Shown: positions 16,870 to 59,404 of the stretch, one piece after another
Numbering within the stretch: position 1 is the first letter of the stretch
How the letters are laid out: each line of letters opens with the position of its first letter
Virus record (IMG/VR): IMGVR_UViG_3300024308_000302
Span: 186,001 to 250,000 of that record
DNA: 64,000 nt
Strand: one strand, 5' to 3'
Position numbers and translations under genes: made by a program
The notes under the pieces: generated by a model
What the model was told of the DNA's origin: nothing
Database searches by the model: none
Seen by the model: the letters and a program-made list of their open reading frames with translations, nothing else

Positions 16870-16890
16870 AAAAAGAGGCCGAAGCCTCTT
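16870..16890 (-). terminator. GAGGC-family terminator (exact 20-mer)
   Basis: AAAAGAGGC-CGAA-GCCTCTT overlapping the stop at 16889. Confidence 0.88.
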
Positions 16891-25026: not shown

Positions 25027-26924
25027 GCGACTCTCTGTTTAAATTGTTTTTTATTTTGTGTACTATTTTCTTCTACTATGCCTAACATGTTTTTTAATTT
25101 TTCAACTGAATCATCATCTAGGACATGTCTATCTTTATTTGTATACAATGTTGCATTATATGCCTGCTCAAATCTTATATCTTTATCATAAACACGATCA
25201 TCATTTTTGTAATGCATGGCATAATCTTCACCATTAGGCTTAATAGTAAATCCAATCATGGAGGATATATCAGAAGACGCCTTATTAAAGTCATACATAA
25301 TATATTGACGATTAGAACATTTAACTTTTGATTCATCTTCAAGTGTATATGTTGATCCTGTGTTGGTTACATATTGTTCAAAGTAATCTAAATCACGAAC
25401 AATACACCATGAAGTAGATCCAAAAGCTTGACATTGCTCATGAGTTTTTATCTCAAATGTAACAATGTTCTTATCATCATATATCTTTTCTATACCAAAA
25501 GATTCTAATTTGGCAGTCAGGTCTTCTTGTGTAAACTGATCAAAATGATTTAAAGTTCTTGTCAACATATTAATAACATCATCATTGTCTTTTAAAGCAG
25601 CTATCTTTCTACCAACAAATGTTTGCAATTGTGATGTTGTAACATTATTGTCATATAATGATTTAAAGTGGGGTTCTGTTTCATCATTGAAATGATGTTT
25701 ATATTTAGAACTCAGAATACTATAAGCGAACTGCTTTATTTTATTACGTGCAACAATATGATTGATTTCATCATCAATTGCCTCAAAAGACTTGTCTTTG
25801 AAATTATTCAAATCAAAATTATACTGTTTTAAAACAGCATGATTCTCCAATAATGATTGCACGGCTTTAATGCCATTAGCATATTTTTTTTCTTCAAGTA
25901 TTTTTTGTTGGAAGAATGGAACACTTTTTGGTTTCTTTCTTAATAAGTAGGCAACAGCATCAAGATGAAGTTCTTTCGTGAACTTTTCTAAGGTTTCATT
26001 ATCTTTTATAGTATGATACTGATTATCTTTTCTATAAACTAAACTCTTATCATCAAAGTAATAAACCTTGTCTATCTTTTGAGAGGCAGTAAAAGTTATA
26101 TCAAATACAGAACTATCAGTTAAAAGTTTAGTGGCTAAAAATGATTCAACAGAGCTATCAGATAAATTAGAAGAAGCATCTCTAATAAAAATATCAGCTT
26201 TAGACATGAAAAAGTCAGGATCATACTTTGTTAAAATAAACTTTACTTTATCATTGAATTCTTTATTTTCTTTTTCATATTTAATCAATAGATCAGAAAA
26301 ATCTTGAGTATTTATTGAATTTTGAACATAATCATTGATATATTTAAAAAGATACTTTCTTTCATCTTCATGAATAAAAGAAATACTCAACTCATCAAGT
26401 AAATTATAATAGGTATTTATAAAAGTATTAAATTTATTATATGTATCAACAATTTTTATACCTAATTCCATTATTTCATAATGGTTGTCATCTAAATTGT
26501 GAACATCTTCAATACTGAGTTCATTATCATAGCCATCAAAATTTTGTAATTTATTTTGAACTAAAGTACGCCATTCTCTATTCAAGGCATAATTACGTTC
26601 AGTAAAAGAAGAAATAGATGAAAACTTTCTTTCTGGTTGTGGATAAACTTGTGGCATATAAACCAAAAGAGCATCAATTGATGTAATTTTTGTAATATCT
26701 GTATCTTGGATAGAAGAAACAATACCTATTTTTTCATAAACTAATTTACTCAAAGTTGCATTTTTATCAACAGGCTTAGCATTAAGTTCGCTTTGAGAAA
26801 ACTCTGGGATAAATGTCATTTCATTATAGTTTAAATGAATATCATCATCCATGTGAAGATCAGCAGTGTATATTCTTAGATCATTTAATTTTTCAATCTG
26901 TTTTAAATTCTCATTTAATTCCAT
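25023..26924 (-). CDS. gene A of duplicated operon; C-terminal FGSxSWCIVRD domain (PcfJ-like, tentative)
   Basis: Shares LKQYNFDLN, KIKQFAYSILSSKYKHHFN and AFGSTSWCIVRD with 46086..47924. Confidence 0.82.
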   Translation of the reverse strand: MELNENLKQIEKLNDLRIYTADLHMDDDIHLNYNEMTFIPEFSQSELNAKPVDKNATLSKLVYEKIGIVSSIQDTDITKITSIDALLVYMPQVYPQPERKFSSISSFTERNYALNREWRTLVQNKLQNFDGYDNELSIEDVHNLDDNHYEIMELGIKIVDTYNKFNTFINTYYNLLDELSISFIHEDERKYLFKYINDYVQNSINTQDFSDLLIKYEKENKEFNDKVKFILTKYDPDFFMSKADIFIRDASSNLSDSSVESFLATKLLTDSSVFDITFTASQKIDKVYYFDDKSLVYRKDNQYHTIKDNETLEKFTKELHLDAVAYLLRKKPKSVPFFQQKILEEKKYANGIKAVQSLLENHAVLKQYNFDLNNFKDKSFEAIDDEINHIVARNKIKQFAYSILSSKYKHHFNDETEPHFKSLYDNNVTTSQLQTFVGRKIAALKDNDDVINMLTRTLNHFDQFTQEDLTAKLESFGIEKIYDDKNIVTFEIKTHEQCQAFGSTSWCIVRDLDYFEQYVTNTGSTYTLEDESKVKCSNRQYIMYDFNKASSDISSMIGFTIKPNGEDYAMHYKNDDRVYDKDIRFEQAYNATLYTNKDRHVLDDDSVEKLKNMLGIVEENSTQNKKQFKQRVA

Positions 26925-44594: not shown

Positions 44595-46089
44595 ATATTT
44601 TATTTTTTATCTTATTTTTAATTGTCTTCCCATCGTCAGTGCTCTTATAAAGTTCAAATGCTTCATCGTAAGATTTAGCTTCTGTAATAGCAATAGCCTT
44701 TAAGAAGTCTCCATTTTGATATAGAGATAACAAATTTGGATAATTGTTTTTTATCAAGTTCGCTAACTCATCTGGTTTAATATATGTCAATAAACTACTG
44801 TTTGCAGTATGATCTAAATGAAGGACAATTTTATGTTCTTGAAGGTAATCTAAAACAGGAGCAATATAGGCAAGTTTTTCTTCTGCTGTAGCAGTATAGG
44901 ATAAAGCTGAATCAATTACAAAACAAACTTTCAAATTATCTCGTTGTTCAATACATAAATTATGGTAATACATTTTAAAGAAACTATTATCACCAGAAAT
45001 GTGAATGTAGTTATAATCACTCTCTAAATATCTTTTAGATAAAGAATGATAACCATAAGTTAGACTTGGTTCGGCTGACAAAATAGAAATCTTGGGATCT
45101 ATTAAATCAAAATCAGCAGTCGTTTCAGACAAAGGAATACCAGAAGCTCTTATAGTGTTATCATCAATAACAATTTCCATCATAGAGTCTGAAACGGATT
45201 TAAACCATTCAGGACGATTATTTTCAATAAAACTAATAAAATCATTAAGAACTGGTGTATTTAGCATATCTTCTTCACTTTTAGCATTTGCCATTACACC
45301 AAGAACTACAGATTCTTTTGCCTGAAACAAATAGAAGTAATCATCAAATTCTTTATAGTAGTCATCCATAAGCTCTATATAAGTTTGATCAGCATCTATA
45401 ACAGTAATGTTAAATTTATGCTCAAATTTATGTGGTCTTAAATTAGCATCTAAAGGAATTTCTTTGTCCAACAAATCAATAATATTCTTAACGTAGAAGC
45501 TAACAGATTGAGCACTGACATCATTACTATTCATTACATCCTTAAAGCAATTAAAAGTATGACACAATTTAACAATAGGTAAATTTTGAATAGTATATGA
45601 AAAGTCAGTAAGATGATTTTTTTCACTAAATGCTAAATTGAATTTAGATATAAAATCTTTAAAACCATCACTATCATCTAATATATCATTAATAATTTTA
45701 ACCACTTGTTTATCTGAATTATTTAAAATCGGAATTGCATTAAAATCGTCGTTACGTGTTGGCTTTATTGAATTTAAAGTATCAGCAAGAGCTAAAGAAT
45801 ATTCATAGGCTTCATTTTCGTCTTCTGTTGGTTGCTTGGAATTTAACTTGGACTCAATAAATTTACCGTGTTCATTTTCTGTTAAAATTCTTTTTGATCT
45901 GTAACTTATGGCTAAAGGATTATCTTCTAAATCAGTTTTGGATAAACTGAGATCATAAAAGTCCTTTAATAATGTTGTTTTATAGAATTTTAAAGTTGAC
46001 AATTCATTGAAATAGTTGTCATTAATAGAATTAGACAATTTAAATTCTTCACGCAATTTTATAAAATCTTCTGCTTTTGCTTTTTTCAT
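44593..46089 (-). CDS. gene B of duplicated operon (paralog of 23584..25026)
   Basis: ATGA coupling; MKKA start; DDNTIRASG, HISGDNSFFK. Confidence 0.85.
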   Translation of the reverse strand: MKKAKAEDFIKLREEFKLSNSINDNYFNELSTLKFYKTTLLKDFYDLSLSKTDLEDNPLAISYRSKRILTENEHGKFIESKLNSKQPTEDENEAYEYSLALADTLNSIKPTRNDDFNAIPILNNSDKQVVKIINDILDDSDGFKDFISKFNLAFSEKNHLTDFSYTIQNLPIVKLCHTFNCFKDVMNSNDVSAQSVSFYVKNIIDLLDKEIPLDANLRPHKFEHKFNITVIDADQTYIELMDDYYKEFDDYFYLFQAKESVVLGVMANAKSEEDMLNTPVLNDFISFIENNRPEWFKSVSDSMMEIVIDDNTIRASGIPLSETTADFDLIDPKISILSAEPSLTYGYHSLSKRYLESDYNYIHISGDNSFFKMYYHNLCIEQRDNLKVCFVIDSALSYTATAEEKLAYIAPVLDYLQEHKIVLHLDHTANSSLLTYIKPDELANLIKNNYPNLLSLYQNGDFLKAIAITEAKSYDEAFELYKSTDDGKTIKNKIKNKI

Positions 46090-47924
46090 GATAATCTCTG
46101 TTTTAATTTAACTTTGTTTTCTTTAATGACACCATTTTCTTTTAAGTAACTTTCAAGTGAATCAATGGTACTTTCTGTCATTGAGTGTTCTTCTCTGTTT
46201 GCATAAAGAGCTGCTTTTTGTGCAATTTCAATTTGTTTAGTAATATCTGAACCATATAACTCATCATCATTTTTTAAGTGTTGAGCATAAGAAGAACCAG
46301 ATTGATCAAGTGTAAAACCAATCATGGAATAAATGTCAGTAGAGCGTTTATTAAAGTCACATAGAATGTATTGTCGATTATTAACGTCCGTTACATACTG
46401 ATCAAAATAATCCTCATCACGAACTATACACCAAGATTTTGAGCCGAAAGCAACACATTGTTCATAATCTTTAACTTCAAAAACATAAATGCCATTATCA
46501 GCATATAACTTATTCAAACCAAATGATTCTAATTTTAAATCAATAACTTCTGGCGTAAATTGATCGAAATAATTCAATAATCCAGTTAGCATATTAATGA
46601 CATCTTCATTGTTTTTCATGGCTGCAATTTTCTTACCAACAAAAGTTTGAAGTTGTGATGAAGTAACTTTATTATCATACAATGATTTAAAATGTGGTTC
46701 GGTTTCTTCATTGAAGTGATGTTTATATTTTGAACTCAAAATAGTATAAGCAAATTGTTTTATTTTGTTTTTATATACAATATTATTAATTTTATCATCA
46801 ATACCTTCAAAATTTTTATCTTTCAAAGAGTTTAAATCAAAATTATATTGTTTCAAAACCGGGTAGTGCTCTAACAATGAATGAACTGTCTTGATAGCGT
46901 TTTCAACACCATCTTCATGTATCTTGTTTTTAAAGAATGGAATATGAGATGGTTTCTTTCTTAGAATAAATGAAACTGCATCACTATGAACATCACGATT
47001 AAATTGTTCTAATTCTTTGTTATTAGTGATTGTGTTATAAACTCCATTCTTTAAATAAGCAATGCTATTATCATTAAAAACTAAAACCTTATTTATTTTT
47101 TGAGAGGATGTAAGTTCAAGTGTAGCAAAGACTTCCTCAGAAATATTTTTAGTATGTATAAACTTTTCTAAAGAGTTATCACTAGGAATTTTTGATTCTT
47201 GTTCTATGAATTGAACAGCCTGAGATATCAAATATGTAGGATCTAATTTGGTGATTTCGTTTTTTACTGTCTGAATATAATTATTATTAGCAGATTCATA
47301 CTTATGATACGAATCATAAAAATCTTTAATATCTGGTATTGCATCAACTAATTTATTAATTGATTTTATAATGTACCCCTTATCTTCTTCATGTAAAAAA
47401 GATTTAGACAATTGTTCATTTAAAACATAATATGAGAATAAGAATTTATTAATCAAGACATAGTTCTTTTGAAGATCAGCAGCAAAATCTTCAACTATTT
47501 CGCGTTTAGTAATCAAATCATCAGTTATAGATTCATCAAAATGATCAAACTCTTCCATCTTTTCTAAATACAAGTTATACCATGCTTTATTTAACTCTTT
47601 ATTATTTTTAACAACATCACGTACTTGCATTTTTTTAGTGTAATCTGGAGCAACTTTGCTATAATGATCAACAGCATCAGCAGTTGATTCAAATTTGATA
47701 TGATCAGTCTCTTTTATTATATTTAAGATATTATCTAATCTATTTATGGTTTCAGATAAAGGAACTGCGTGTTCATTGACAGAGTTTACTTTATTCTCTT
47801 TGAAGAAAGGTATAAATGTTAATTCGTTATATTTTAATTTAGCAGAACTGTAACTCCAAAGAGAACCACCAACTCTTAATTCATTAAGGCTATCAATTTT
47901 ACTTAAAATTTCTTCAAGATTCAT
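46086..47924 (-). CDS. gene A of duplicated operon (paralog of 25023..26924; start refined to MNLEE)
   Basis: AFGSKSWCIVRD, KIKQFAYTILSSKYKHHFN. Confidence 0.82.
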   Translation of the reverse strand: MNLEEILSKIDSLNELRVGGSLWSYSSAKLKYNELTFIPFFKENKVNSVNEHAVPLSETINRLDNILNIIKETDHIKFESTADAVDHYSKVAPDYTKKMQVRDVVKNNKELNKAWYNLYLEKMEEFDHFDESITDDLITKREIVEDFAADLQKNYVLINKFLFSYYVLNEQLSKSFLHEEDKGYIIKSINKLVDAIPDIKDFYDSYHKYESANNNYIQTVKNEITKLDPTYLISQAVQFIEQESKIPSDNSLEKFIHTKNISEEVFATLELTSSQKINKVLVFNDNSIAYLKNGVYNTITNNKELEQFNRDVHSDAVSFILRKKPSHIPFFKNKIHEDGVENAIKTVHSLLEHYPVLKQYNFDLNSLKDKNFEGIDDKINNIVYKNKIKQFAYTILSSKYKHHFNEETEPHFKSLYDNKVTSSQLQTFVGKKIAAMKNNEDVINMLTGLLNYFDQFTPEVIDLKLESFGLNKLYADNGIYVFEVKDYEQCVAFGSKSWCIVRDEDYFDQYVTDVNNRQYILCDFNKRSTDIYSMIGFTLDQSGSSYAQHLKNDDELYGSDITKQIEIAQKAALYANREEHSMTESTIDSLESYLKENGVIKENKVKLKQRLS

Positions 47925-47998
47925 GTTTAAATTATTATTTGATTGTATTTTTATATTGTAACATATAAACAAGAAAAAAATAGACTAAAAAAAACAAT

Positions 47999-50887: not shown

Positions 50888-51199
50888 ATGGAATATATAA
50901 ACGCTAACGGAATAAATAATAACTCAAATCAACCACAACCAGAAAATGAAGAAGTAGATAAATGTATTAAATATTTAAAAAATATAATAGAAAATGATGT
51001 ATATAACAAAACCACTAGCAGCTATGCTCTTAAACATTTAATAGACAAAGAAGAGACATATGTCTCAAATGGTGCATTTATAGAAGCATTGCGTATATTA
51101 AAAATGAGTTATGAAAGATGTTCTGAAGAGTCGCCAAATGTTTGGGTAAAATTTGATATAAAAGATTTAGAAAGAGCAATAAAAGAATACAAAAGTTGA
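50888..51199 (+). CDS. small hypothetical protein (SSYALKH...YVSNG motif)
   Basis: 103 aa; followed by a terminator; the motif recurs in phage proteins, function not assigned. Confidence 0.72.
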   Translation: MEYINANGINNNSNQPQPENEEVDKCIKYLKNIIENDVYNKTTSSYALKHLIDKEETYVSNGAFIEALRILKMSYERCSEESPNVWVKFDIKDLERAIKEYKS

Positions 51200-51200
51200 T

Positions 51201-51225
51201 AAAAAAGAGGCTTCGGCCTCTTTTT
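51201..51225. terminator. GAGGC-family terminator (exact 20-mer, plus orientation)
   Basis: AAAAAAGAGGC-TTCG-GCCTCTTTTT. Confidence 0.88.
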
Positions 51226-51316
51226 ATCATCACTCTACATTATTTTTTCTTCTTGCTACGCTCATCAAACTTCTCAAATGTAGCATTTGCATATATAGAA
51301 AGATAATTTAAAAAAA

Positions 51317-51898
51317 TTATGCAATTAGATCATATTTTAATTTATGATCATTGATTTTCTGTTTAAACATTTCAGTCATTTCATCTAATGTTAAAAGATG
51401 AAGATGTTCTTCTAGCTCATACCAACATCTAAAATCTTTTAAATAAGAGATAATCATTTCTTTATCACAAGGACCAAGAAGAATATAATAAATTTTATAC
51501 TTTTCACGACATGAAAACTTCTCAGTAATATACTCAGAATATTTTTTTAATTCTACTACAAGTCTACCAATAAGTTCTTCATTTGCTTTTTTAACATTCA
51601 CCGTTTTTTCTGAAATAGATTTAACTTCAATATTTAAATAATAATCCGCAAAATCGGCAATTTTAAATGCTTCTGACGACCTGAAATTACTTTCTCTCTT
51701 GTGTAACCGCACTTGGCTGTCTAAAACAAATGGAAATCTGTTGAAATATTCAGCTTTTACAGTCTCACCTTTTTTTAAAGCCATCTGATATAATTTTACT
51801 AATTTATCACGTTGATTAATAAAACAACCAATTTCTTTAAGCCTTTTTTCAACAATCTTCTCTGCTTTCTTTCCATTTATATACGAAACTTTAGACAT
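51317..51898 (-). CDS. PD-(D/E)XK restriction-like nuclease
   Basis: N-terminal GKKAE helix; IADF...LNIEVKS catalytic D...ExK pattern. Confidence 0.65.
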   Translation of the reverse strand: MSKVSYINGKKAEKIVEKRLKEIGCFINQRDKLVKLYQMALKKGETVKAEYFNRFPFVLDSQVRLHKRESNFRSSEAFKIADFADYYLNIEVKSISEKTVNVKKANEELIGRLVVELKKYSEYITEKFSCREKYKIYYILLGPCDKEMIISYLKDFRCWYELEEHLHLLTLDEMTEMFKQKINDHKLKYDLIA

Positions 51899-52067
51899 TA
51901 GAATATAAACCTTTATATCTTGAATTTGAAAGTATTATAGCATGAAGACTGTTTTCATGCTACTATTTTTTGTTGTTGGCTGAAATAAGATAGTCCATAG
52001 ATTTAGTATTGAGTTGATTTTTTTTATTTTGATAATAAAATTTTAATAATTAATAAAAGAATAAAAG

Positions 52068-53198
52068 ATGACAGAAATTAAGAATATAAGAATATTATTA
52101 GAATACTATTTTAATAATTTTAAAGATGAATACGCAATAGCTACTTCAGTATTAATGTATGTAGATACAAGTAGCGAATTTGCAATAAAAAAAGAAATTG
52201 AGAAAAGAGTTGATCTTTTTGACAATAAAGATATAGACATTAAAGATAAATGTGAAAAAGTTTTTAATATTTTAGAAGATATAAAAGAAAATATTGGATT
52301 AAATTTTGGTAAAAACGAACAAATATTATATAATGAAAATAAATTTACATCAAGCTTCAAATTGCTTTCTGATTTTTGCAAAGGTGCTTCAATAATAAAT
52401 TCTGCATATTCCAAGGAATATATAGATATGACAGGAAAAGGATATAAAAGAATGTTGTCACAATTATTGACAAAAATCAATAACAACTTAATTGAAGTCA
52501 TTATTGAAAAAAAGAATAATAATCTTGATAGTATAGTAAAATCAGAAACTGATTATATAAGTAATATGAAAAGTAATAAAACAAATAATGGCATAAAATT
52601 GCTTAATTATCATGCTTCAATAGAAAGGGATAGAAAAGAGTATATAGAAAATGAAATAAAAAAAATAAATAATGATAATAAAATAATTGGTGAAGCAATA
52701 GGTTGTTTTTTGTTAAACTATCATAAAACATACGAATTTGAAATAGATCATTATACCGAATTAATAAAACACTTAAGAAAAAATATAGAGCCAAAAGAAA
52801 GAACTGAATTTGAAGGTGTGATACAAGCATCAGATTATGCTATTAGCTATTGGGCTACTAATTTTGACAAAATAAAAAGTGAAGAACAAAAAATAAATGA
52901 TGAATTTGAAAGTTGGAATTTAAAAAGCTTTCTTAGCTCTGTAGTTGCAGGAAAATTATTGACACAGAAAAATATTGACGAATTAACTTTTATAAGTGAG
53001 TTAAGGTTTATTAACAACAATAACGGGCAAGAAATGAACAGTATTGAAGTTAAAAAAATATTTGATAAAGCAATGGAAGAAAAACAAAAAATTAAACAAA
53101 AAGTAAAAGTAAAGGAACCAGAAATACTAAAAGAAATAGAAAAAAAAGAAGAAAAAATAGGTTTTATAAAAAGAGGCATAAATTGGTTTTATAAATAA
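52068..53198 (+). CDS. helical hypothetical protein with an amphipathic C-terminal tail
   Basis: 376 aa, very A-rich; ends KIGFIKRGINWFYK. Confidence 0.78.
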   Translation: MTEIKNIRILLEYYFNNFKDEYAIATSVLMYVDTSSEFAIKKEIEKRVDLFDNKDIDIKDKCEKVFNILEDIKENIGLNFGKNEQILYNENKFTSSFKLLSDFCKGASIINSAYSKEYIDMTGKGYKRMLSQLLTKINNNLIEVIIEKKNNNLDSIVKSETDYISNMKSNKTNNGIKLLNYHASIERDRKEYIENEIKKINNDNKIIGEAIGCFLLNYHKTYEFEIDHYTELIKHLRKNIEPKERTEFEGVIQASDYAISYWATNFDKIKSEEQKINDEFESWNLKSFLSSVVAGKLLTQKNIDELTFISELRFINNNNGQEMNSIEVKKIFDKAMEEKQKIKQKVKVKEPEILKEIEKKEEKIGFIKRGINWFYK

Positions 53199-53200
53199 AG

Positions 53201-53357
53201 AAGAGGCAGAAGCCTCTTATGTTTTTGGCAGTTTCTCCGAATATTCACGCTTCTTCTAAGAAGTGGTGACACCCAAATAACCGTCCAAGGTTACATCATT
53301 TTTTGTGCTTGTTGCGACTGTCAAACTTACCAAAGCATGGAAGCCCGAAATCCTTTC
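53201..53357. repeat. direct repeat copy 1 (terminator + hairpin + last about 20 codons of the RNA ligase gene)
   Basis: Matches 56022..56177 except two substitutions and a 1-nt insertion. Confidence 0.95.
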
Positions 53358-53628
53358 ATATGTAGAAAGATCATGTAAAGTTTTATTTATCATACTCATT
53401 AAAATATTGAATTTACTTACTGTACAGAATATCTTAAAACTAAGATGTATCTGATATACAACATATTTTTATAAATATATTTTTGAAATTAATTAATGAA
53501 GATTATAATTATAAAAAAAGGAAAATAAAATCAATGAAATGCACTATTGATTTTCAAAAAAATAAAAAGTATCATAGTAAAAACACTAATTTTTTTTAGA
53601 TAAGTATAGAAATAATTAAGGAGATATT

Positions 53629-53817
53629 ATGACAACTAAAGCAGAAATATATAACGAAAAAGATGAGTTAATAAATACTTTTGAAGGTGTTAATTTAATT
53701 CCAATAAAAGATGGAAGTTCAATATTCGCAAATAGTTCATCGCAAAGACCAGTATTATATTATAATTTAAAACCGGGCCATTATATTAAGAATATATTAA
53801 CATCAATAACTAAATAA
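53629..53817 (+). CDS. small hypothetical protein
   Basis: AAGGAG RBS; 62 aa; followed by a terminator. Confidence 0.75.
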   Translation: MTTKAEIYNEKDELINTFEGVNLIPIKDGSSIFANSSSQRPVLYYNLKPGHYIKNILTSITK

Positions 53818-53835
53818 ACAAGATAAAAATAGAAT

Positions 53836-53863
53836 AAAAAAGAGGCTACTGCCTCTTTTTTTT
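53836..53863. terminator. GAGGC-family bidirectional terminator
   Basis: AAAAAAGAGGC-TACT-GCCTCTTTTTTTT. Confidence 0.85.
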
Positions 53864-53962
53864 ACCATCATACTATATCAATTTTTCTTCTTATAACGTT
53901 CATAAAAATTGAAGAATGAAGCAAAACTAAAATCTTTAAATATGTCAAAAGTAATTAAACTT

Positions 53963-55600
53963 TTAAATAACATCAATAACAAGATTAATTGCAAAAGAAT
54001 TATTAAGAAGATCTGATTTTAAGTCAGGATAACCAGCATAAATATTATTTGTTATAGCCACTCTAATTGGTTCATATAAATTATCTTCTAAATATGTTTT
54101 TAAATTATCATCTTGTATCGAATCTATGATTTCGTCAAATAAATCATTAAAATCTTCTAAGCAATAATTTAAGATCTCGCTTTTACTAATAGTTGAAAGA
54201 AAAGGAATATTGAAATTTTTCAAATTTAAAGAATTTCCACCTTTGGACAAATAAATATAAACACAATTTTTAAAAGAATAAAATAATTTATAGTATAAAA
54301 TATAATTGACTAATTTTTTTCGATAAACAGCTTTCATTTTATTACTGATAACTTTTCTTTTGGCTGCTTTATATTTATTAGTAGAGAAAAAGAGTTCCAA
54401 GAAACTTGGGTTATCTTTCAAAGAATCAGAATAGGCATTAAATAAATCATAAATAATATCTATGTTATTTATTTTTTTGAGCATATTTTTAGGACAATAA
54501 TATATGCCAATTTTATTTGACGACAAAGAATCGCAATTATTGTTGATATTTTTAAGATGCCATTTTTTGTTTTGTTTTTTTAATTCATTAAAATAAGTAT
54601 TTTTTGCTTTAATTTCTTTATTTTTTTCTTTCATTGTTTTTAAAATGGTGCTCTCTTTATATATTGGTGGATTACACAGTATACAAACGTTATTTCTGGC
54701 ATATGATTTTCTTATGCCTTTTATTGAACAATTAACACAATTAATAGTTTTTAACTTTAAAAATTTTCTACAAATGTAACAAGAAAAAGAATCTGATGAT
54801 CTTGATAATTTTATCAGGGTTTTATAATCATGATAATGCTCTCCAAAAAAATTAACACAATTTGGACATTTAACTTTATCGATTACAACAGGTATTCTGA
54901 AAATAACATCATTATATGAAGAATGATTAAAAAGAATAATAAAGTGTTTTAAATCATCATAAAGAAAATAAGTAGGCAATTTATTTATGCTTAAATGTTT
55001 ATTTATTGTATACAAAGGCATTAAAGAAACAGCAGCTACAAAATAATTAGAACGTGCCAAATTGGTAAGATTATTAATCATATCTTTCCTAAAATATAAA
55101 AAATAATCTATTAAAAATTGTTTTTTCTTACTCAAAACAAAATAACAAACAATATAGTCATTTAAAATTTTATTTAAATCATTTTTAATATTTTCTACAT
55201 TGAAAAGGTATGAAGTGTGGCTGTCAGCATTTCGCTTTGAATTAATATCATAAAATAACAAATTGAAATCATTATAATTAATTGGATTTTTTTCGAAAAA
55301 ATCATTACCATGTAGACTCTTAACAATATCAATTAGAATCGATGCATTTACTGATCTTATGGTATTACCTGTTTCAGAAGAGATATTAGCGTTTACATCT
55401 TTTTCAACAACTAAGCCTCGTAATGTGAGTTCACAATAATCATGTAAAGATGAATAAAGCTCTGTATAAAATAAATTAATATTACGCTTCCCAATATAAC
55501 CAGAATCTATAAATGCTGAAATATTGAAAAAATTCTCAAAGAAAATGGCATTAGCTTTATTATAGAAAAGATCTGGATCTGAATTAAACATTTTACTCAT
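53963..55600 (-). CDS. HEPN-like RNase domain plus multi-CxxC zinc-finger protein (start refined to MSKMF)
   Basis: AGGAGG RBS; DYCELTLR helix and KRNADSH (RxxxxH, 55217..55237); CPNC, CYIC, CVNC, CILC. Confidence 0.65.
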   Translation of the reverse strand: MSKMFNSDPDLFYNKANAIFFENFFNISAFIDSGYIGKRNINLFYTELYSSLHDYCELTLRGLVVEKDVNANISSETGNTIRSVNASILIDIVKSLHGNDFFEKNPINYNDFNLLFYDINSKRNADSHTSYLFNVENIKNDLNKILNDYIVCYFVLSKKKQFLIDYFLYFRKDMINNLTNLARSNYFVAAVSLMPLYTINKHLSINKLPTYFLYDDLKHFIILFNHSSYNDVIFRIPVVIDKVKCPNCVNFFGEHYHDYKTLIKLSRSSDSFSCYICRKFLKLKTINCVNCSIKGIRKSYARNNVCILCNPPIYKESTILKTMKEKNKEIKAKNTYFNELKKQNKKWHLKNINNNCDSLSSNKIGIYYCPKNMLKKINNIDIIYDLFNAYSDSLKDNPSFLELFFSTNKYKAAKRKVISNKMKAVYRKKLVNYILYYKLFYSFKNCVYIYLSKGGNSLNLKNFNIPFLSTISKSEILNYCLEDFNDLFDEIIDSIQDDNLKTYLEDNLYEPIRVAITNNIYAGYPDLKSDLLNNSFAINLVIDVI

Positions 55601-56021
55601 AAAACCTCCTAAATTAAAATTTATATCCAATATTACATAATATATCATAAATAAAGTAGTCTTTAAAAAAATAGAGTCTTTTTGAACTATGAAAATAGGT
55701 AATAAAAATAAAACCAACTATTTTTATATCTTTATATCATATAAATTAATAAAAAATATACAAAAAAGACATATAACGTGTAATATATTATAAATAAAGT
55801 AAATTGTTAATACAAATATATTATTGAAAAATGAAAATATTTTTTACGTTTTTTATAAATCTAAACGAAGATTTATAAAGTTAATTTATATATAATAATG
55901 CTTATTTTATAAGCTTATTTCTTAAGTTTTTGAACAAATACATATAAAACAGCAATTTTAGAACATTTTTTATCAATATATGTAAAAATAAAAACGTGAA
56001 GTTTTTTTAATAGAAATAAAA

Positions 56022-56177
56022 AAGAGGCCGAAGCCTCTTATGTTTTTGGCAGTTTCTCCGAATATTCACGCTTCTTCTAAGAAGTGGTGACACCCAAATA
56101 ACCGTCCAAGGTACATCATTTTTTGTTCTTGTTGCGACTGTCAAACTTACCAAAGCATGGAAGCCCGAAATCCTTTC
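56022..56177. repeat. direct repeat copy 2
   Basis: Native 3' end, 3' UTR and GAGGC terminator (56018..56039) of the ligase gene. Confidence 0.95.
56046..56109 (-). ncRNA. candidate structured 3' UTR: 64-nt rod-like hairpin (second copy 53225..53288)
   Basis: UUGG-A-CGGUU/AACUG-CCAA closes UUUGGGUG/UAUUCGGA, UCAC/GUGA and CUUCU-UAGA-AGAAG; the G-U pairs form only on the sense strand. Confidence 0.4.
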
Positions 56178-56769
56178 TCCTTAATTTAGCATAACGCCCA
56201 TCAGGATGGTGGAAAACAAGTCCTTCTTCGTTTTCAAACTTGTCTTCGAAAAGTTTTTTCAAACCTTCAAAAGAGAAGTCAGTCACTTCAAACGCAACAC
56301 TACCATGTTCCCAGAGTTCGTGGCGAGTAAGGTTGTAGGGGTTGCCATTAACCTTTGGGCCAACAAGTTCGTAGGTTTTGCCATCCTTCAACTCTCCAGA
56401 ATTTGCAAGAGCCTCAAGGTGAAACTTGTCCTCTGGACCTTCACCAACAGGAACCCAGTGTGGGAAATGCAGGCTATGAGCAGCAGGCTTAGCTTCACAA
56501 GGAATAGCACCTGCTGGAACCTCATTGAACATATGGTCTTCTGGTACAAACTTATCGCCCAATTTACGAGCCAATTTCGAGAAATTCGATTTCAGCTTGC
56601 GGTCAAAGCGTTTAAACAGTTTGCCATCCTTGAAGTAGGCAGACGAACCATCAAACTTGATAGTAGCCTTGCCTTCACCACGAACAACCCATTCCGCACC
56701 CGGAGTAACAACATCGGTAGCAAGATCAGTATTACGGTCAATCACGAACAGAGTTTTGATTTTTTTCAT
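56116..56769 (-). CDS. ATP-dependent RNA ligase, RLIG1 (C12orf29)/DUF5565-like
   Basis: Motif I KFDGS, RFDRK, HFPHWVPV, motif III ELVGPKVNGNPY, motif IV EGLVFH, motif V YAKLRRKDFGL; AGGAG RBS. Confidence 0.82.
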   Translation of the reverse strand: MKKIKTLFVIDRNTDLATDVVTPGAEWVVRGEGKATIKFDGSSAYFKDGKLFKRFDRKLKSNFSKLARKLGDKFVPEDHMFNEVPAGAIPCEAKPAAHSLHFPHWVPVGEGPEDKFHLEALANSGELKDGKTYELVGPKVNGNPYNLTRHELWEHGSVAFEVTDFSFEGLKKLFEDKFENEEGLVFHHPDGRYAKLRRKDFGLPCFGKFDSRNKNKK

Positions 56770-56849
56770 GTTAAATCTCCTAAATAGATTAAAGTAGTTT
56801 TCGAATCCAACCGCCTCTATTTAAGGGTTTCCCCTCTGTTTGTGAAGCT

Positions 56850-56878
56850 AGTATAGCAAAACACGACCTATTGTGCAA
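56850..56878 (-). promoter_or_regulatory. sigma70-type promoter of the RNA ligase gene
   Basis: TTGCAC-17 nt-TATACT with extended TG; implies a leader of about 75 nt. Confidence 0.68.
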
Positions 56879-56911
56879 GATTTTTTTTAACCAATGATAT
56901 CGAAATTACTA

Positions 56912-57559
56912 TCAAATAATTAACATCCTGAGTGTAATTAGATTATTTTCAAATTCACTAGTATTAATACGATAAGCACCATCAAAGTACCATTCTGGAA
57001 ACAATTCCTTTGTAATTTCTTTATCATCATTGAGAAATACTTCAAGAAGCCTAAATTCATCATCTAATGGACAAAGCATATTACGATGCTTAGTAACGTT
57101 CAAAACAATATCTTGACTTGATTTTGATTTAAGATAATGAAGCGATTGATATTCAAAGTTGCTATCATATGAAATTGAGATTTTGTAACCTAACATGCCA
57201 GATTTAGAGCATCTTTTTACAATCGTATAAGATAAATCGACATTTGATATAATACCATTATTGTCAGTAGTAACTATACAATTACTTCCAAAAACAATAT
57301 TACTATTAAGCTGTTTTAAAAAATGAGAAATAGGCAATATCGGACTTAAACCAGTTAGCTCGATTTTTTGATTGTTGTAGGCATAAAACTTATCAAAATT
57401 TTTGATATTCTGTTGTTCGCTCATAAAAGAACTGTCAAATTTATTGAATACCAATCGTGCAATATTGCTTACAAAAGATTGAGCTTGTTTCTTTTTTTTC
57501 ATAGCTGCATCATAGTTTTCTTGATAAACACTATAATTTGATTTTAAGGTAGGCGTCAT
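56912..57559 (-). CDS. hypothetical protein, C-terminal M(-4) family (subgroup C)
   Basis: AAGG RBS; ends FPEWYFDGAYRINTSEFENNLITLRMLII. Confidence 0.82.
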   Translation of the reverse strand: MTPTLKSNYSVYQENYDAAMKKKKQAQSFVSNIARLVFNKFDSSFMSEQQNIKNFDKFYAYNNQKIELTGLSPILPISHFLKQLNSNIVFGSNCIVTTDNNGIISNVDLSYTIVKRCSKSGMLGYKISISYDSNFEYQSLHYLKSKSSQDIVLNVTKHRNMLCPLDDEFRLLEVFLNDDKEITKELFPEWYFDGAYRINTSEFENNLITLRMLII

Positions 57560-57573
57560 AATTAATTACCTTT

Positions 57574-57801
57574 TTAAATAAAAAGTCGAGTAAAATCAAC
57601 AATAACATCTCTATTATTGTTGCATTGTTTACCACAGCATTTACATTTACGATTTGACTTTTGAATGTCTTCCAAAACAGCCAAAGCTCGCTTGTTAGCA
57701 GCGATAGCTCTTGATTCAGCTTCTTTTGCTCTAGCTAAAGCATAATCAGCACGAGCAAACAAATCAGTCAGGTTGGACAATGATTTTAACTCCTTTACCA
57801 T
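57574..57801 (-). CDS. small coiled-coil protein with a C-terminal Cys cluster (start 57801, or TTG at 57780)
   Basis: Ala-rich helix then RKCKCCGKQC; AAGGAG precedes the TTG. Confidence 0.7.
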   Translation of the reverse strand: MVKELKSLSNLTDLFARADYALARAKEAESRAIAANKRALAVLEDIQKSNRKCKCCGKQCNNNRDVIVDFTRLFI

Positions 57802-58453: not shown

Positions 58454-59404
58454 TTAACCTTTAAATTTGTTACAAACTTGAATCTTTTGTTTTTCATTTT
58501 TACGCTGGAAATTCAACTTATAGAAAACCATCTGGTTGAGCACATCAAGCGTATACGCGGCATCATTGCCAGCAACATGCAGTCTCAAATAAGGAATATC
58601 AAATGTACGAAGGGCTGTTCGAAGAGAAGCTGTCTCATTTTTAACATGATCACTGTTCAAGAAATGAAACTCATTTTTTGAAACATAAGAAGTATCAATG
58701 AAATTCATATTCTCAATAAACTCTTCTTCAAGGCCAAGCTGTTTCAGAATACTAATTTCAGTACAAAGATTATGGCCAACCAAATAATCACAATCAGAAA
58801 AATGCTCTTTGAAAATATCCAAAATAGCAGTTTTGTCGATATTGGAGGTTTCACCATAGTTAAAACGGTCTTTAGACTCATTTGAGAAAGAATAGTTGTA
58901 TGACATTCTTTGGCCATTTACTTGAATAGAAACACCCATTTCAAGCGGTTCAAAGTAATCACCAATGGTTACAAATTCAAAATCAAGAGCCATTAATTTC
59001 TTATCAGCAATATTTGTAGGCAATGGCCGATTGAATGACTCAATTAAATTTGATTTCTTTTTTTTCTTAGTAACACAAGCTTCCTGACGCAATAGCTCAA
59101 GTTCACGCAAATCATTTAAAGAGTTCACAAAAAAGCAGGCGTCTACTTCTGTAACTGTACTTTTCTCATAAGGTGCTGTTTTTTTCTTGATTCGAAAACG
59201 TTTATAAAGCTCGTTTTGAAATAATTGAAAAGATTCAACATCAATATAGAGCAATGAATTTTGAGTGTAGATTTTAGAGAAAATTTTAAGGTCAATAAGG
59301 TTTTCAGAGGTAAAAAACTTTTTAACAGCAGCAATTTTTTCAGATTCTTCCAATGGAATTCGGTTAAATGTTACGCCACGAATTTTGTCAATATTGTAGT
59401 ACAT
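58454..59404 (-). CDS. DEDDh 3'-5' exonuclease
   Basis: ExoI LMALDFEF, ExoII YLVGHNL, FIDTS, ExoIII LHVAGNDAAYT; GAGG RBS. Confidence 0.85.
   Translation of the reverse strand: MYYNIDKIRGVTFNRIPLEESEKIAAVKKFFTSENLIDLKIFSKIYTQNSLLYIDVESFQLFQNELYKRFRIKKKTAPYEKSTVTEVDACFFVNSLNDLRELELLRQEACVTKKKKKSNLIESFNRPLPTNIADKKLMALDFEFVTIGDYFEPLEMGVSIQVNGQRMSYNYSFSNESKDRFNYGETSNIDKTAILDIFKEHFSDCDYLVGHNLCTEISILKQLGLEEEFIENMNFIDTSYVSKNEFHFLNSDHVKNETASLRTALRTFDIPYLRLHVAGNDAAYTLDVLNQMVFYKLNFQRKNEKQKIQVCNKFKG

What the first reader, a model, noticed from the sequence alone, without database searches (positions are those of the whole stretch)
53201..56177. HEPN-zinc-finger cargo inserted between 157-bp direct repeats that duplicate the RNA ligase 3' end
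Seen: 53201..53357 and 56022..56177 differ by only two substitutions and one indel. Each holds the GAGGC terminator, the 64-nt hairpin and the last about 20 ligase codons. Between them (about 2.8 kb repeat to repeat) lie a 62-aa gene, a bidirectional terminator and a 545-aa protein with an RxxxxH motif and four CxxC pairs, all in extremely AT-rich DNA. No integrase or transposase is present. Established: HEPN RxxxxH domains are RNases used in toxin and abortive-infection systems, and phage RNA ligases repair RNA cut by such nucleases. Inference: a recent recombinase-free capture that can be excised or amplified through the repeats. It places an RNase next to an RNA ligase, giving a possible switchable RNase/repair (toxin-antidote) module.
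Basis: partly seen in the sequence, partly recalled or inferred. Interest (0 to 1): 0.75.

Follow-up and report, generated by a model that had tools for sequence, protein, structure and literature searches.

The report
Removable HEPN nuclease cassette behind ligase
A 2.8-kb gene cassette carrying a probable RNA-cutting (HEPN) protein sits between two near-identical copies of the end of an RNA ligase gene; some natural samples have it and others cleanly lack it, showing how short repeated gene ends let viral-type genomes swap accessory genes without any dedicated enzyme.

Summary
Two 168-bp direct repeats (53190-53358 and 56011-56177; 4 substitutions, 1 indel) each hold the last 19 ligase codons, a 76-nt hairpin and a GAGGC terminator. 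They are the only two copies in the 290-kb record.

The predicted empty site exists. One public run has a contig identical to the window with exactly one repeat copy plus the 2.65-kb cargo missing. At least five runs hold the flanks but not the cargo.

The 545-aa protein belongs to a tiny new family (5 representatives in 1.8 billion). It has an invariant RNxxxH, four invariant CxxC pairs and an N-terminal domain whose best fold matches are all HEPN.

The history is older and more layered than "one recent capture". The region holds four ligase-tail-plus-terminator modules. The 62-aa gene is an old convergent neighbour of the ligase, not a partner of the nuclease. The junction beside copy A recurs in a distant relative, where the orthologous nuclease gene lies in an 11.5-kb segment with a four-gene tyrosine-recombinase module, between ligase core and displaced tail.

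The nuclease/ligase toxin-antidote idea has no support: the two genes are separate transcription units and each occurs without the other. Verdict: a new variant of known repeat-mediated cassette shuffling, carrying a new HEPN family.

The parts
56178..56769 (-). Conserved core of the RLIG1-family RNA ligase gene (the full ORF is 56116-56769, 217 aa, with a KFDG nucleotidyl-transferase motif).
   Evidence: PHROG 14301 at 5e-47 and Pfam RLIG1 at 36.5 bits. 83% aa identity to the L018 ligase and 56% (127 of 225 aligned positions) to the L003 ligase; similarity to L003 ends at residue 201. GC 0.44.
56011..56177 (-). Repeat copy B, attached to the ligase core. It holds the ligase tail codons KDFGLPCFGKFDSRNKNKK plus stop (56116-56175), the hairpin (about 56040-56115) and the GAGGC terminator (56022-56039).
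55601..56010 (-). A 410-nt spacer upstream of the nuclease gene. It is the most AT-rich stretch of the whole record (GC 0.15), has promoter-like sites, and holds an internal 60-nt direct repeat. Its first 20 nt after the terminator match L003 at the same position (18 of 20).
53963..55600 (-). 545-aa HEPN/zinc-ribbon gene. The N-terminal HEPN-like domain is about residues 6-160, with invariant R123, N124 and H128. Four invariant CxxC pairs lie at residues 245-309. The C-terminal helical part is modelled at low confidence.
53836..53962 (-). Module R3: a degenerate junction motif right after the nuclease stop codon, an old ligase-tail relic (53878-53937, reading KDFSFASFFNFYERYKKKN*), and a bidirectional GAGGC terminator (53836-53861). 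It has no long hairpin.
   Evidence: It is colinear with the ligase tail plus terminator of L018.
53629..53817 (+). 62-aa gene, convergent with the nuclease gene. Together with R3 it is a remnant of an older arrangement of ligase tail, terminator and convergent small gene.
   Evidence: Homologue P0007 (56% identity) is the immediate convergent neighbour of the ligase in L018-L020. L018 1986-2322 aligns to window 53614-53937 (70%, E 3e-37).
53359..53628 (.). Spacer holding the promoter-like sites of the 62-aa gene. At its left end is a 22-nt junction motif (minus strand, 53379 down to 53358) that abuts copy A. The motif is preceded by a possible relic of a gene end (NEYDK*).
53190..53358 (-). 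Repeat copy A: an orphan ligase tail (tail codons 53299-53355 plus stop 53296-53298, preceded by an in-frame stop codon), the hairpin and the terminator (53201-53218). Its left edge overlaps the stop codon of the 376-aa gene. The 47-aa ORF 53256-53399 is a by-product of this fragment, not a conserved gene.
52068..53198 (+). 376-aa gene of unknown function, convergent with the ligase direction. In the cargo-less form it is the ligase's direct neighbour.
51198..51312 (-). Module R4, behind the unrelated 193-aa gene (51317-51898). It holds the junction motif (51291-51312, 3 mismatches), a ligase-tail relic (51240-51290, reading ...FEKFDERSKKKK*) and a GAGGC terminator (51201-51225).
   Evidence: Within the local alignment of the relic to the L018 tail, a 36-nt stretch has a single mismatch (my count from the printed alignment). 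The last 8 codons plus flank match the 3' end of the L003 nuclease gene (39 of 44). The 193-aa protein itself is unrelated to the nuclease family.

Best explanation
The 3' end of this RLIG1-family RNA ligase gene is a recombination hotspot. The last 19 codons (a tail outside the conserved ligase core) and the terminator behind them have been copied several times, so short stretches of identical DNA are scattered over 5 kb.

The 2.8-kb segment between the two youngest copies (A and B, about 97% identical) is a dispensable cassette. It is present in some natural populations and cleanly absent in others. The two forms differ by one crossover between A and B, mapped to the 15 nt around the ligase stop codon. 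The crossover was by homologous or, less likely, site-specific recombination. No recombinase is encoded in the cassette or the record, so the host or phage general recombination system is the likely agent. Loss would be intramolecular. Gain would come by recombination with a cassette-bearing relative or an excised circle. Either way the ligase stays intact.

The payload is one gene: a 545-aa protein of a very small new family. It has an N-terminal HEPN domain with an RNxxxH catalytic motif, two zinc ribbons and a helical C-terminal part. It most likely acts as a stand-alone, conditionally activated RNase of the abortive-infection or competitor-exclusion type, as ApeA and other single-protein HEPN systems do.

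The nuclease gene, with its conserved 3' flank, was originally inserted at the boundary between ligase core and tail. This probably happened as part of an integrative element with tyrosine recombinases, as still seen in relative L003. The window's copy is a recombinase-less remnant.

Shown: the repeats, the empty site, the crossover interval, the four tail modules, the conserved junction and the family conservation. Inferred: HEPN RNase activity, the biological role, the element origin and the direction of the change.
For: Repeats and their uniqueness.

Empty site:
- Run X7 has a 4118-bp contig equal to window 52701-53291 joined to 56112-57600, with 0 mismatches. The cargo depth in X7 is about 0.
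- The 0.33 word share of X7 equals the flank fraction of the stretch.
- The cargo-only search does not list X7, X9, X15, X16, X6, X10 or X12, although these held 0.15-0.35 of the larger stretch.
- The single copy in X7 is A-type at four differences and B-type at the fifth. This places the joint in 53292-53306.
- The cargo-bearing form is in three independent studies.

Tail modules:
- Alignments and shuffle tests give z of 7 to 19.
- Only four tail-like sequences exist in 290 kb, all within 5 kb.
- Relatives L018, L028 and L029 show that the tail is the true C-terminus of this ligase clade. A different gene follows the ligase in each.

Conserved junction: window copy A against L003 16030-16200 is 37 of 43 identical, with the same in-frame stop before KDFG.

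L003 context: the order is ligase core, a different tail, proteins of 394, 560, 591 and 125 aa with integrase domains, the nuclease orthologue, then the orphan tail.

HEPN:
- Invariant R123, N124 and H128 and 8 invariant Cys.
- Sub-threshold HEPN_Apea hits in 2 of 5 members, over the motif region.
- The N-domain model has pLDDT 79, and its nine best matches among 48,161 PDB chains are HEPN or HEPN-like proteins, Z 7.7-8.8.
- The nearest language-model clusters are named HEPN and zinc ribbon.
Against: - Fold Z scores of about 8.8 are in the range that helical bundles can reach by chance, according to the tool's own note. No HEPN profile passes a curated cut-off. The C-terminal 60% of the protein is poorly modelled. 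No activity data exist.
- The direction of change (gain or loss) is unresolved. A crossover in a 15-nt window is only about 9% of the repeat length, so a site-specific event or a later point mutation in copy A are equally possible.
- The element-origin idea rests on one relative (L003), plus a different recombinase cluster near a 32%-identical homologue (L009/L010).
- Scans of IMG/VR and JGI metagenome contigs found no further example of the junction.
- Contig evidence cannot show rare variants, circles or tandem copies.
- The nature of the replicon is unverified: no capsid, terminase or sheath Pfam hit, no PHROG hit for 10 large ORFs, and the parent contig is 1.54 Mb.
Confidence: 0.6

Rival explanations
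1. Non-autonomous site-specific element. The cassette is the stripped-down relative of an integrative element of the SE/GInt/Tn554 type (three tyrosine-recombinase-fold proteins plus a small helper). This element targets the core/tail boundary of RLIG1 ligase genes and carries a replacement tail, so that the ligase survives insertion. Copies A and B would be attL/attR-like sites. Insertion and excision would be catalysed in trans by recombinases of a co-resident element. The 22-nt junction motif would be the element's conserved end.
For: - In L003 an 11.5-kb segment begins right after the ligase with a 394/560/591/125-aa module carrying Phage_integrase domains. It ends at the same motif|KDFG junction as copy A.
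- That module has the gene sizes and order described for SE elements (IntA, Tfp, IntB, Srap; PMC10214605).
- The homologue in L009/L010 also lies beside a tyrosine-recombinase cluster.
- The 18 of 20 nt after the ligase terminator are shared by the window and L003.
- The motif (91% identical) and the nuclease (70% aa) are better conserved than the ligases (56% aa). That fits horizontal movement of the nuclease unit.
- The joint in X7 lies in one short interval at the stop codon.
Against: - No tyrosine or serine recombinase is found in the 290-kb record.
- The recombinases of L003 and L009 are not detectably related to each other.
- The two tails flanking the L003 segment are not similar to each other, so L003 has no long att-like repeat.
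- A 168-bp identity is far longer than a recombinase core needs and is enough for homologous recombination.
- The motif always follows a nuclease-gene 3' end or its relic, so it may simply be that gene's 3' flank.
- The left-end match is weak (19 of 500 shuffles score as well).
- Only one autonomous example is known.
Confidence: 0.25
2. The nuclease and the ligase form a functional pair, in which an RNase toxin is repaired or neutralised by the ligase or by the 62-aa protein. The pair would be switchable, because the repeats let the RNase gene be excised or amplified.
For: - A HEPN-type gene lies directly downstream of an RNA ligase gene in two diverged genomes, the window and L003.
- Phage ligases are known to repair tRNA cut by host anticodon nucleases (established knowledge: T4 Rnl1/Pnk against PrrC).
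- ApeA-type HEPN proteins cleave tRNA anticodon loops (preprint 10.64898/2026.01.26.701840).
- The cassette is indeed excisable.
Against: - The genes are separate transcription units, with a terminator and a 410-nt spacer between them.
- The ligase occurs without the nuclease in X7, L018, L028 and L029.
- The nuclease family occurs without a ligase within 8 kb in L009/L010.
- The homologue of the 62-aa gene is a ligase neighbour where no nuclease exists. The gene is convergent, not co-transcribed.
- HEPN RNases leave 2',3'-cyclic phosphate and 5'-OH ends, which an ATP-dependent 5'-P/3'-OH ligase cannot seal without an end-healing enzyme (established knowledge). None was recognised among the neighbours.
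- The adjacency is explained by insertion-site history.
Confidence: 0.12
3. The repeated unit is kept because it is a functional RNA element. It would be a 3'-UTR or small-RNA module (hairpin plus terminator, with the junction motif as its promoter in copy A). The duplication would then be a regulatory gene duplication, and the cargo incidental.
For: - The hairpins are more stable than shuffled sequences (z = -3.3 to -3.7).
- Copy A is preceded by a conserved motif ending in ...ACATATG and is followed about 150 nt later by a terminator. This is the layout of a small transcription unit.
- The junction is conserved in L003.
- Copies A and B are much more alike than the older relics.
Against: - There is no Rfam match.
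- The long hairpin is absent from L003, L018, L028, L029 and from modules R3 and R4.
- The part conserved across genomes is the ligase-tail coding sequence, not the hairpin.
- There are no transcript data.
- The motif also directly follows gene stop codons where a promoter is not expected.
Confidence: 0.05
4. Assembly artefact: the repeat or the cargo placement is a mis-join in the metagenome assembly.
For: The window comes from a metagenome contig of 1.54 Mb. Repeats of this size can cause mis-joins.
Against: - The two copies differ at five positions, and both versions are present in the source run.
- An independent assembly of the source run spans 53328-56059. The repeat-internal contig has about 1.7 times the flank depth.
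- An unrelated soil sample gives 0-mismatch contigs across the junction from cargo through copy B into the ligase.
Confidence: 0.02

Closest known systems
PeSL-mediated modular shuffling in T4-type phages (Arbiol et al. 2010, PMC2839356; Comeau et al. 2014, PMC4122927)
   Same: Short repeated regulatory cassettes containing terminator stem-loops flank non-essential ORFan genes in hyperplastic regions. Recombination between neighbouring cassettes creates the insertions, deletions and replacements that distinguish close relatives, without a dedicated recombinase. Here, too, near-identical genomes differ by exactly one inter-repeat segment.
   Different: The repeated unit here is not a promoter plus stem-loop. 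It is the 3' coding tail of one particular gene (the ligase) plus hairpin and terminator. It occurs only at this one locus (4 copies in 290 kb) rather than genome-wide. Mini-circles were not tested. The replicon is not a T4-type phage.
Integrative elements that insert into the 3' end of a gene and carry a replacement 3' end (tRNA/tmRNA-targeting islands; e14 and phage 21 in the E. coli icd gene; recalled from established literature, not re-read here)
   Same: Direct repeats made of the target gene's 3' end flank the element. The gene stays intact after insertion, and a displaced, slightly different 3' fragment is left at the far side. Older displaced fragments can accumulate.
   Different: No integrase is present in the window's cassette or record. 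An integrase module is seen only in relative L003. The order of divergence of the relics does not fit simple tandem accretion, because the inner relic R3 is older than the outer copy A.
SE / GInt / Tn554-type elements with several tyrosine recombinases (PMC10214605)
   Same: The L003 segment next to the ligase starts with four co-directional, overlapping genes of 394, 560, 591 and 125 aa. Three of them have Phage_integrase matches. This is the size and order pattern of IntA-Tfp-IntB-Srap. Such elements are target-specific and carry cargo.
   Different: Those elements are known from Gamma- and Betaproteobacteria or Firmicutes chromosomes and plasmids. They leave 6-bp footprints, not 168-bp repeats. 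Sequence relationship to SE or GInt proteins was not tested. The module is absent from the window.
ApeA and other single-protein HEPN anti-phage RNases (Pfam HEPN_Apea PF18739; HEPN survey PMC3710099; ApeA preprint 10.64898/2026.01.26.701840)
   Same: Both have an RNxxxH motif in a four-helix HEPN domain and a large single polypeptide with extra domains. HEPN_Apea is the best (sub-threshold) Pfam match of two family members. Homologue P0004 lies in a defence-island-like neighbourhood.
   Different: The scores are below the Pfam cut-off (18.8 against 24.4 bits). This family has two zinc ribbons and a different C-terminal part, and its HEPN domain is N-terminal. Oligomeric state, ligand pocket and tRNA cleavage are unknown. 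It is carried on a virus-classified record rather than a bacterial chromosome.
HEPN-MNT type II/VII toxin-antitoxin pairs
   Same: The best structural matches of the N-domain include HEPN toxins of HEPN-MNT systems.
   Different: There is no MNT nucleotidyltransferase partner. The protein is four times larger than those toxins. The neighbouring 62-aa gene is convergent and has a different evolutionary origin.

Membership tests
HEPN superfamily (545-aa protein) | Conserved Rx4-6H motif, commonly R-N-x-x-x-H. | tested here: met
   RNADSH at residues 123-128. R123, N124 and H128 are invariant in all 5 family representatives at 28-70% identity.
HEPN superfamily (545-aa protein) | All-alpha, four-helix up-and-down bundle fold. 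| tested here: met
   The N-domain model has pLDDT 79.2 and pTM 0.79. The nine best of 48,161 PDB chains are HEPN or HEPN-like proteins, Z 7.7-8.8, covering 112-130 of 119-141 residues. The full-length model gives the same result. AFDB matches are named RiboL-PSP-HEPN, AbiU2-like and DUF4145. Caveat: these Z values are moderate for helical bundles.
HEPN superfamily (545-aa protein) | Significant profile match to a curated HEPN family. | tested here: inconclusive
   HEPN_Apea hits at E 0.0023 and 0.027 for 2 of 5 members, 18.8 bits against a cut-off of 24.4, over the region up to the motif. The window protein itself has no hit. There is no PADLOC or PDB sequence hit.
HEPN superfamily (545-aa protein) | Metal-independent RNase activity that depends on the R and H residues. 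| not testable with these tools
   This needs expression and cleavage assays.
ApeA defence family | Membership of Pfam PF18739 at its gathering score; doughnut-shaped oligomer with an activating ligand pocket; tRNA anticodon cleavage. | tested here: not met
   Scores are below the gathering score. The architecture differs: zinc ribbons and an N-terminal HEPN domain. The other features were not tested. It may work like ApeA, but I do not file it as a member.
RLIG1 / DUF5565 RNA ligase family (217-aa protein) | Profile match above the curated cut-off, and a nucleotidyl-transferase motif I lysine (KxDG). | tested here: met
   Pfam RLIG1 at 36.5 bits against 25, and PHROG 14301 at 5e-47 over residues 1-203. 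KFDG is read directly from the translation. There are 197 relatives at E <= 1e-30, some named DUF5565 / RNA ligase 1 family. Activity was not tested.
PeSL-type shuffling cassettes | Repeated promoter plus stem-loop units spread through hyperplastic regions. | tested here: not met
   The repeated unit is gene tail plus hairpin plus terminator. It occurs only at this locus. The GAGGC terminators alone are genome-wide, 22 copies.
PeSL-type shuffling cassettes | Recombination between neighbouring units produces indels between near-identical genomes. | tested here: met
   The X7 contig has 0 mismatches and lacks exactly one unit plus the cargo. The joint lies inside the repeat, and the cargo words are absent from that run.
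PeSL-type shuffling cassettes | Excised mini-circles. | not testable with these tools
   Only assembled contigs of older runs were available. This needs outward-facing PCR or raw or long reads.
Integrase-mediated insertion into a gene 3' end (icd/e14 type, tRNA-island type) | The element is flanked by direct repeats of the target gene's 3' end, and the target gene is restored. | tested here: met
Integrase-mediated insertion into a gene 3' end (icd/e14 type, tRNA-island type) | The element encodes its own site-specific recombinase. | tested here: not met
   No PF00589 or PF00239 match in the 290-kb record. The two cargo ORFs have no Pfam or PHROG hit. This feature is met only in relative L003.
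SE / GInt / Tn554-like elements (applies to L003, not the window) | A four-gene core: an ordinary tyrosine recombinase, a large recombinase-fold protein, a large recombinase and a small auxiliary protein, at one end of the element. | tested here: inconclusive
   Gene sizes, order and overlaps fit, and three genes have Phage_integrase matches (E 1.8e-16, 4e-4, 8e-5). Homology to SE or GInt proteins, the RHRY residues and the 6-bp footprint were not tested.
HEPN-MNT toxin-antitoxin | An adjacent, co-transcribed MNT nucleotidyltransferase antitoxin. | tested here: not met
   The neighbours have no nucleotidyltransferase match. The 62-aa gene is convergent.

The most novel reading that the evidence does not exclude
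A previously undescribed family of target-specific integrative elements lives inside large phage-like genomes. Its autonomous form carries a multi-tyrosine-recombinase module of SE/GInt/Tn554 type. It inserts at the core/tail boundary of RLIG1 RNA-ligase genes and brings a replacement tail so that the ligase survives. It delivers a new HEPN/zinc-ribbon RNase as cargo. The window holds a miniature, recombinase-less derivative that is still polymorphic in nature. The trail of four ligase tails would then record repeated visits. The choice of an RNA-repair gene as landing site might itself be adaptive for an RNase-carrying element.
Probability: 0.25. Interest if true: 0.7.

Novelty: new variant of a known kind. 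Interest (0 to 1): 0.55.

Why it matters
It gives a clean natural example, with both alleles observed, of how accessory genes enter and leave large virus-type genomes using nothing more than duplicated gene ends. The target gene is kept intact in the process.

It shows that such a site can be reused repeatedly: four tail relics, and a different neighbour in every relative. This makes the ligase 3' end a useful marker for finding mobile cargo in related genomes.

It defines a very rare HEPN/zinc-ribbon protein family, with only five representatives in 1.8 billion clusters. In the two other contexts with enough flanking DNA the family sits next to tyrosine-recombinase modules, which makes it a candidate new defence or inter-virus competition nuclease.

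It also warns against reading gene adjacency (RNase next to ligase) as functional coupling when an insertion hotspot explains it.

Tried and rejected
- DNA similarity to 50,697 phage records found no match.
- Rfam on 50.5-58.5 kb found nothing.
- The window nuclease has no Pfam, PHROG or PADLOC hit.
- A PDB sequence-profile search with the N-domain gave only a chance hit.
- A language-model search with residues 215-545 gave no usable hit.
- A scan of IMG/VR for relatives of the nuclease found none.
- A scan of IMG/VR for the junction motif gave four chance hits in coding DNA, none with a ligase tail.
- A scan of JGI metagenome contigs for the junction found only the window's own contig.
- A scan of GTDB genomes for the ligase found nothing closer than 52% identity, so the host or lineage could not be named.
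- "The ligase is the foreign, GC-rich gene": rejected. GC 0.40-0.49 patches are common in this record, so it is the cargo and its neighbours that are unusually AT-rich.
- "The 193-aa protein is a truncated nuclease": rejected. Only its last codons and 3' flank are shared.
- "Terminal inverted repeats around the L003 recombinase trio": none is convincing.
- L003 and L009 recombinases are not related by BLASTP.
- Hallmark virus genes (Terminase_6N/6C, HK97 capsid, sheath) were not found by Pfam search of the record. None of ten large window ORFs has a PHROG hit. The virus classification is therefore IMG/VR's, not verified by me.
- Distant ligase relatives L005 and L006 (39-41% identity) were looked at but gave no useful context.

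Full report
**1. Observation**

The window is bases 186001-250000 of a 290,157-bp IMG/VR virus record. IMG/VR classes it as a provirus inside a 1.54-Mb metagenome contig.

The direct repeat is real. Copy A is 53190-53358 and copy B is 56011-56177. Two further substitutions lie at the left edge. A search of the whole record finds only these two copies.

Read on the minus strand, each copy holds three things:
- The last 19 codons and stop of a 217-aa ORF.
- A long imperfect hairpin, -34 kcal/mol, z about -3.5 against shuffles.
- A GAGGC-stem intrinsic terminator. The record has 22 terminators of this type.

The 217-aa ORF is an RLIG1/DUF5565-family RNA ligase. It scores 5e-47 against PHROG 14301 and is above the cut-off for Pfam RLIG1. 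It carries a KFDG motif.

Between the copies lie:
- a 410-nt spacer, the most AT-rich 400 nt of the record;
- a 545-aa ORF with a good ribosome-binding site;
- a bidirectional terminator;
- a convergent 62-aa ORF.

No tyrosine or serine recombinase domain is detectable anywhere in the record.

**2. The empty site exists**

I laid Logan contigs of four public runs on 52000-57600.

- Run X7 ("organism A") has a 4118-bp contig that matches 52701-53291 and then continues at 56112-57600. It has no mismatch on either side. Cargo depth in that run is essentially zero.
- X7's share of sampled words from the 4.4-kb stretch (0.33) equals the fraction made up by the flanks.
- A second index search with the cargo alone lists X1-X5, X11 and X23. 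It does not list X7, X9, X15, X16, X6, X10 or X12, which had held 0.15-0.35 of the larger stretch.

So a cargo-less form, identical in its flanks, occurs in several independent samples. The cargo-bearing form occurs in three independent studies: subsurface, soil and freshwater.

The single repeat copy in X7 is A-type at four of the five differences and B-type at the fifth. This places the joint in the 15 nt 53292-53306, around the ligase stop codon.

This pattern fits three histories equally:
- deletion by a crossover between A and B;
- the reverse insertion;
- an ancestral empty site plus one later mutation in the orphan copy A.

I therefore cannot tell gain from loss.

Assembly artefact is excluded. 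An independent assembly of the source run spans 53328-56059. The repeat-internal contig has about 1.7 times the flank depth. An unrelated soil sample has perfect contigs across the junction from cargo through copy B into the ligase.

**3. The payload protein**

The 545-aa protein has almost no relatives. An exhaustive HMMER search of 1.84 billion cluster representatives finds four others, at 70, 35, 32 and 28% identity.

In their alignment, R123, N124 and H128 (RNxxxH) and all eight cysteines of four CxxC pairs are invariant.

Four weak but independent lines point to a HEPN domain at the N-terminus:
- The motif itself.
- Sub-threshold Pfam HEPN_Apea hits for two members, over the segment leading to the motif.
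- An AlphaFold model of residues 1-175 (pLDDT 79, pTM 0.79). Its nine best matches among 48,161 PDB chains are HEPN or HEPN-like proteins, at Z 7.7-8.8 and over nearly their full length. The full-length model and AlphaFold DB clusters give concordant results.
- Language-model neighbours named HEPN and zinc ribbon.

The Z values are moderate for helical bundles and no curated profile is passed. I put the HEPN fold at about 0.8 and RNase activity at about 0.55. The zinc-ribbon region and the C-terminal helical part are poorly modelled.

**4. The locus history is layered**

The repeat boundary at 53358 falls exactly where the conserved ligase core ends (...RRKD|FG...). The PHROG profile and the L003 ligase stop aligning there.

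The tail KDF[GNS]..FGKFD.R.K.KK* is nevertheless the true C-terminus in this ligase clade. It is present in L018, L028 and L029, at 78-84% identity.

Besides A and B, two older tail-plus-terminator relics exist:
- R3 lies directly behind the nuclease gene and reads KDFSFASFFNFYERYKKKN*.
- R4 lies behind an unrelated 193-aa gene and reads ...FEKFDERSKKKK*.

Both lack the long hairpin. Both resemble the hairpin-less tails of L018 and L028. Shuffle tests give z of 7 to 19. These four are the only tail-like sequences in 290 kb.

The 62-aa gene has one homologue family (56% identity). In L018-L020 that homologue is the immediate convergent neighbour of the ligase, with no nuclease present. L018 1986-2322 is colinear with window 53614-53937. 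So the block of 62-aa gene, terminator and R3 is a remnant of an older arrangement of ligase tail plus neighbour. The nuclease gene was inserted into that arrangement at the core/tail boundary.

What follows the ligase differs in every relative examined:

| Genome | Gene after the ligase |
|---|---|
| L018 | 69-aa gene |
| L028 | 208-aa gene |
| L029 | Peptidase_M17 |
| X7 | 376-aa gene |
| Window | nuclease gene |

**5. A conserved junction and a possible autonomous element**

A 22-nt motif abuts copy A on its cargo side (minus strand, 53379 down to 53358). The same motif, with three mismatches, abuts R4.

The motif also occurs twice in L003, a 30-kb contig sharing seven genes with this record.
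- One L003 copy lies directly after the stop codon of the 531-aa nuclease orthologue.
- The other is followed by an orphan ligase tail (KDFGFEFGLPDPRNKK...) with the same in-frame stop before KDFG. It is 37 of 43 nt identical to the window junction, z = 11.

L003's own ligase has an unrelated tail after KKD. So in L003 about 11.5 kb separates ligase core from original tail. That segment starts with four overlapping genes of 394, 560, 591 and 125 aa. Three of them carry Phage_integrase matches. This is the architecture described for SE/GInt/Tn554-type elements (PMC10214605). The nuclease orthologue and five other genes follow.

A 32%-identical homologue (L009/L010) also lies beside a different tyrosine-recombinase cluster. 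Its island holds NADAR, HNH and DUF4238 genes and no ligase.

The last eight codons and 3' flank of the window's 193-aa gene match the 3' end of the L003 nuclease gene (39 of 44 nt). The 193-aa protein itself is unrelated to the nuclease family. I infer that the unit of nuclease 3' end, motif and ligase tail is an old insertion junction whose gene body has since been overwritten in places.

Scans of IMG/VR and JGI contigs found no further instance of the junction. This part therefore rests on two genomes.

**6. Mechanism: best reading and rivals**

Best reading (confidence 0.6):
- The cassette is a presence/absence polymorphism maintained by recombination between dispersed copies of the ligase tail and terminator. 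In principle this resembles PeSL shuffling in T4-type phages (PMC2839356, PMC4122927).
- The repeated unit, however, is the 3' end of one specific gene. This keeps the ligase intact after each event, as in integrative elements that carry a replacement 3' end of their target.
- The payload is a stand-alone HEPN RNase of a new family. It is probably used in abortive infection or competitor exclusion, by analogy with ApeA (PMC3710099).

Rivals:
- A non-autonomous site-specific element mobilised in trans (0.25).
- A functional RNA element (0.05).
- An assembly artefact (0.02).

Evidence against the toxin-antidote reading:
- The two genes are separate transcription units.
- Each gene occurs without the other.
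- The 62-aa gene has a different origin.
- HEPN products (2',3'-cyclic phosphate and 5'-OH ends; established knowledge) are not substrates for a 5'-P/3'-OH ligase without end healing, and no healing enzyme was recognised nearby.

**7. Caveats**

- Contigs show presence, not rare variants. Circles and amplification were not testable.
- The direction of change is open.
- The nature of the replicon is unverified. There are no capsid, terminase or sheath hits. Ten large ORFs have no PHROG hit. A cellular-type M17 peptidase lies at 4065-5459.
- The organism behind X7 is coded and unknown to me.

**8. Verdict**

An excisable cassette with a HEPN payload: yes. A single recent capture and an RNase/ligase module: no.
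- Novelty: a new variant of a known kind. This is repeat-mediated cassette shuffling anchored on a gene's own 3' end, carrying a new HEPN/zinc-ribbon family.
- Interest: 0.55.

Noticed in passing
L003:4792-9801: Four overlapping co-directional genes (394, 560, 591 and 125 aa) lie directly after the ligase terminator of a phage-like contig, and three carry Phage_integrase matches. This is the architecture of SE/GInt/Tn554-type multi-recombinase elements, which by the paper read here are known from Gammaproteobacteria (SE), Gamma-/Betaproteobacteria (GInt) and Staphylococcus/Enterococcus (Tn554).
   Followed up: partly
L009:1-15559 and L010: The 616-aa family member lies in a defence-island-like block: two NADAR genes, a tyrosine-recombinase cluster (702, 634, 186 and 427 aa), an HNH_2 protein, a DUF4238 protein and a weak methylase match.
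   Followed up: partly
window 4065-5459 (-) and L029:6787-8187: A cellular-type Peptidase_M17 (leucyl aminopeptidase) gene, E 5e-107. In relative L029 the M17 gene lies directly downstream of the ligase, whereas here it is 50 kb away. This is further evidence of rearrangement at the ligase 3' end.
   Followed up: no
whole record; window examples at 16875, 19801, 21848, 26989, 31397, 51207, 61876: There are 22 near-identical intrinsic terminators with a GAGGC-N4-GCCTC stem, eleven of them with the exact loop CGAA and two more with its complement TTCG. This is an unusually uniform terminator family.
   Followed up: partly
window 55601-56010: The spacer upstream of the nuclease gene is the lowest-GC stretch of the 290-kb record (0.15). 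It contains an internal direct repeat of about 60 nt (55638-55697 against 55781-55839, 76%).
   Followed up: no
window, ten ORFs of 340-633 aa (for example 25023-26924, 46086-47972): None of these ORFs has a PHROG hit, and only one has a Pfam hit. No capsid, terminase or sheath Pfam domain is found in the record. The parent contig is 1.54 Mb and ligase relatives sit on contigs of 0.6-0.8 Mb. The virus classification deserves checking.
   Followed up: partly
run X3, laid on window 53226-53334 and 56198-56861: A soil metagenome holds, at about 410-fold depth, a relative roughly 85-95% identical in the ligase and about 84% in its 3' hairpin, with different DNA downstream. The same run holds low-depth contigs identical to the window.
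   Followed up: no
L003:11601-11656 and 16073-16196: In L003 the junction motif plus a similar terminator occurs twice, 4.5 kb apart. The two copies bracket five genes (150, 298, 401, 176 and 357 aa). This may be another repeat-bounded cassette block.
   Followed up: no
window 58454-59404 (-): A 316-aa protein with a DEDDh_C exonuclease domain (E 1e-17) lies three genes upstream of the ligase.
   Followed up: no
window 53256-53399 (-): The 47-aa ORF called on this contig is a by-product of the orphan ligase fragment. The same frame is closed in copy B.
   Followed up: yes
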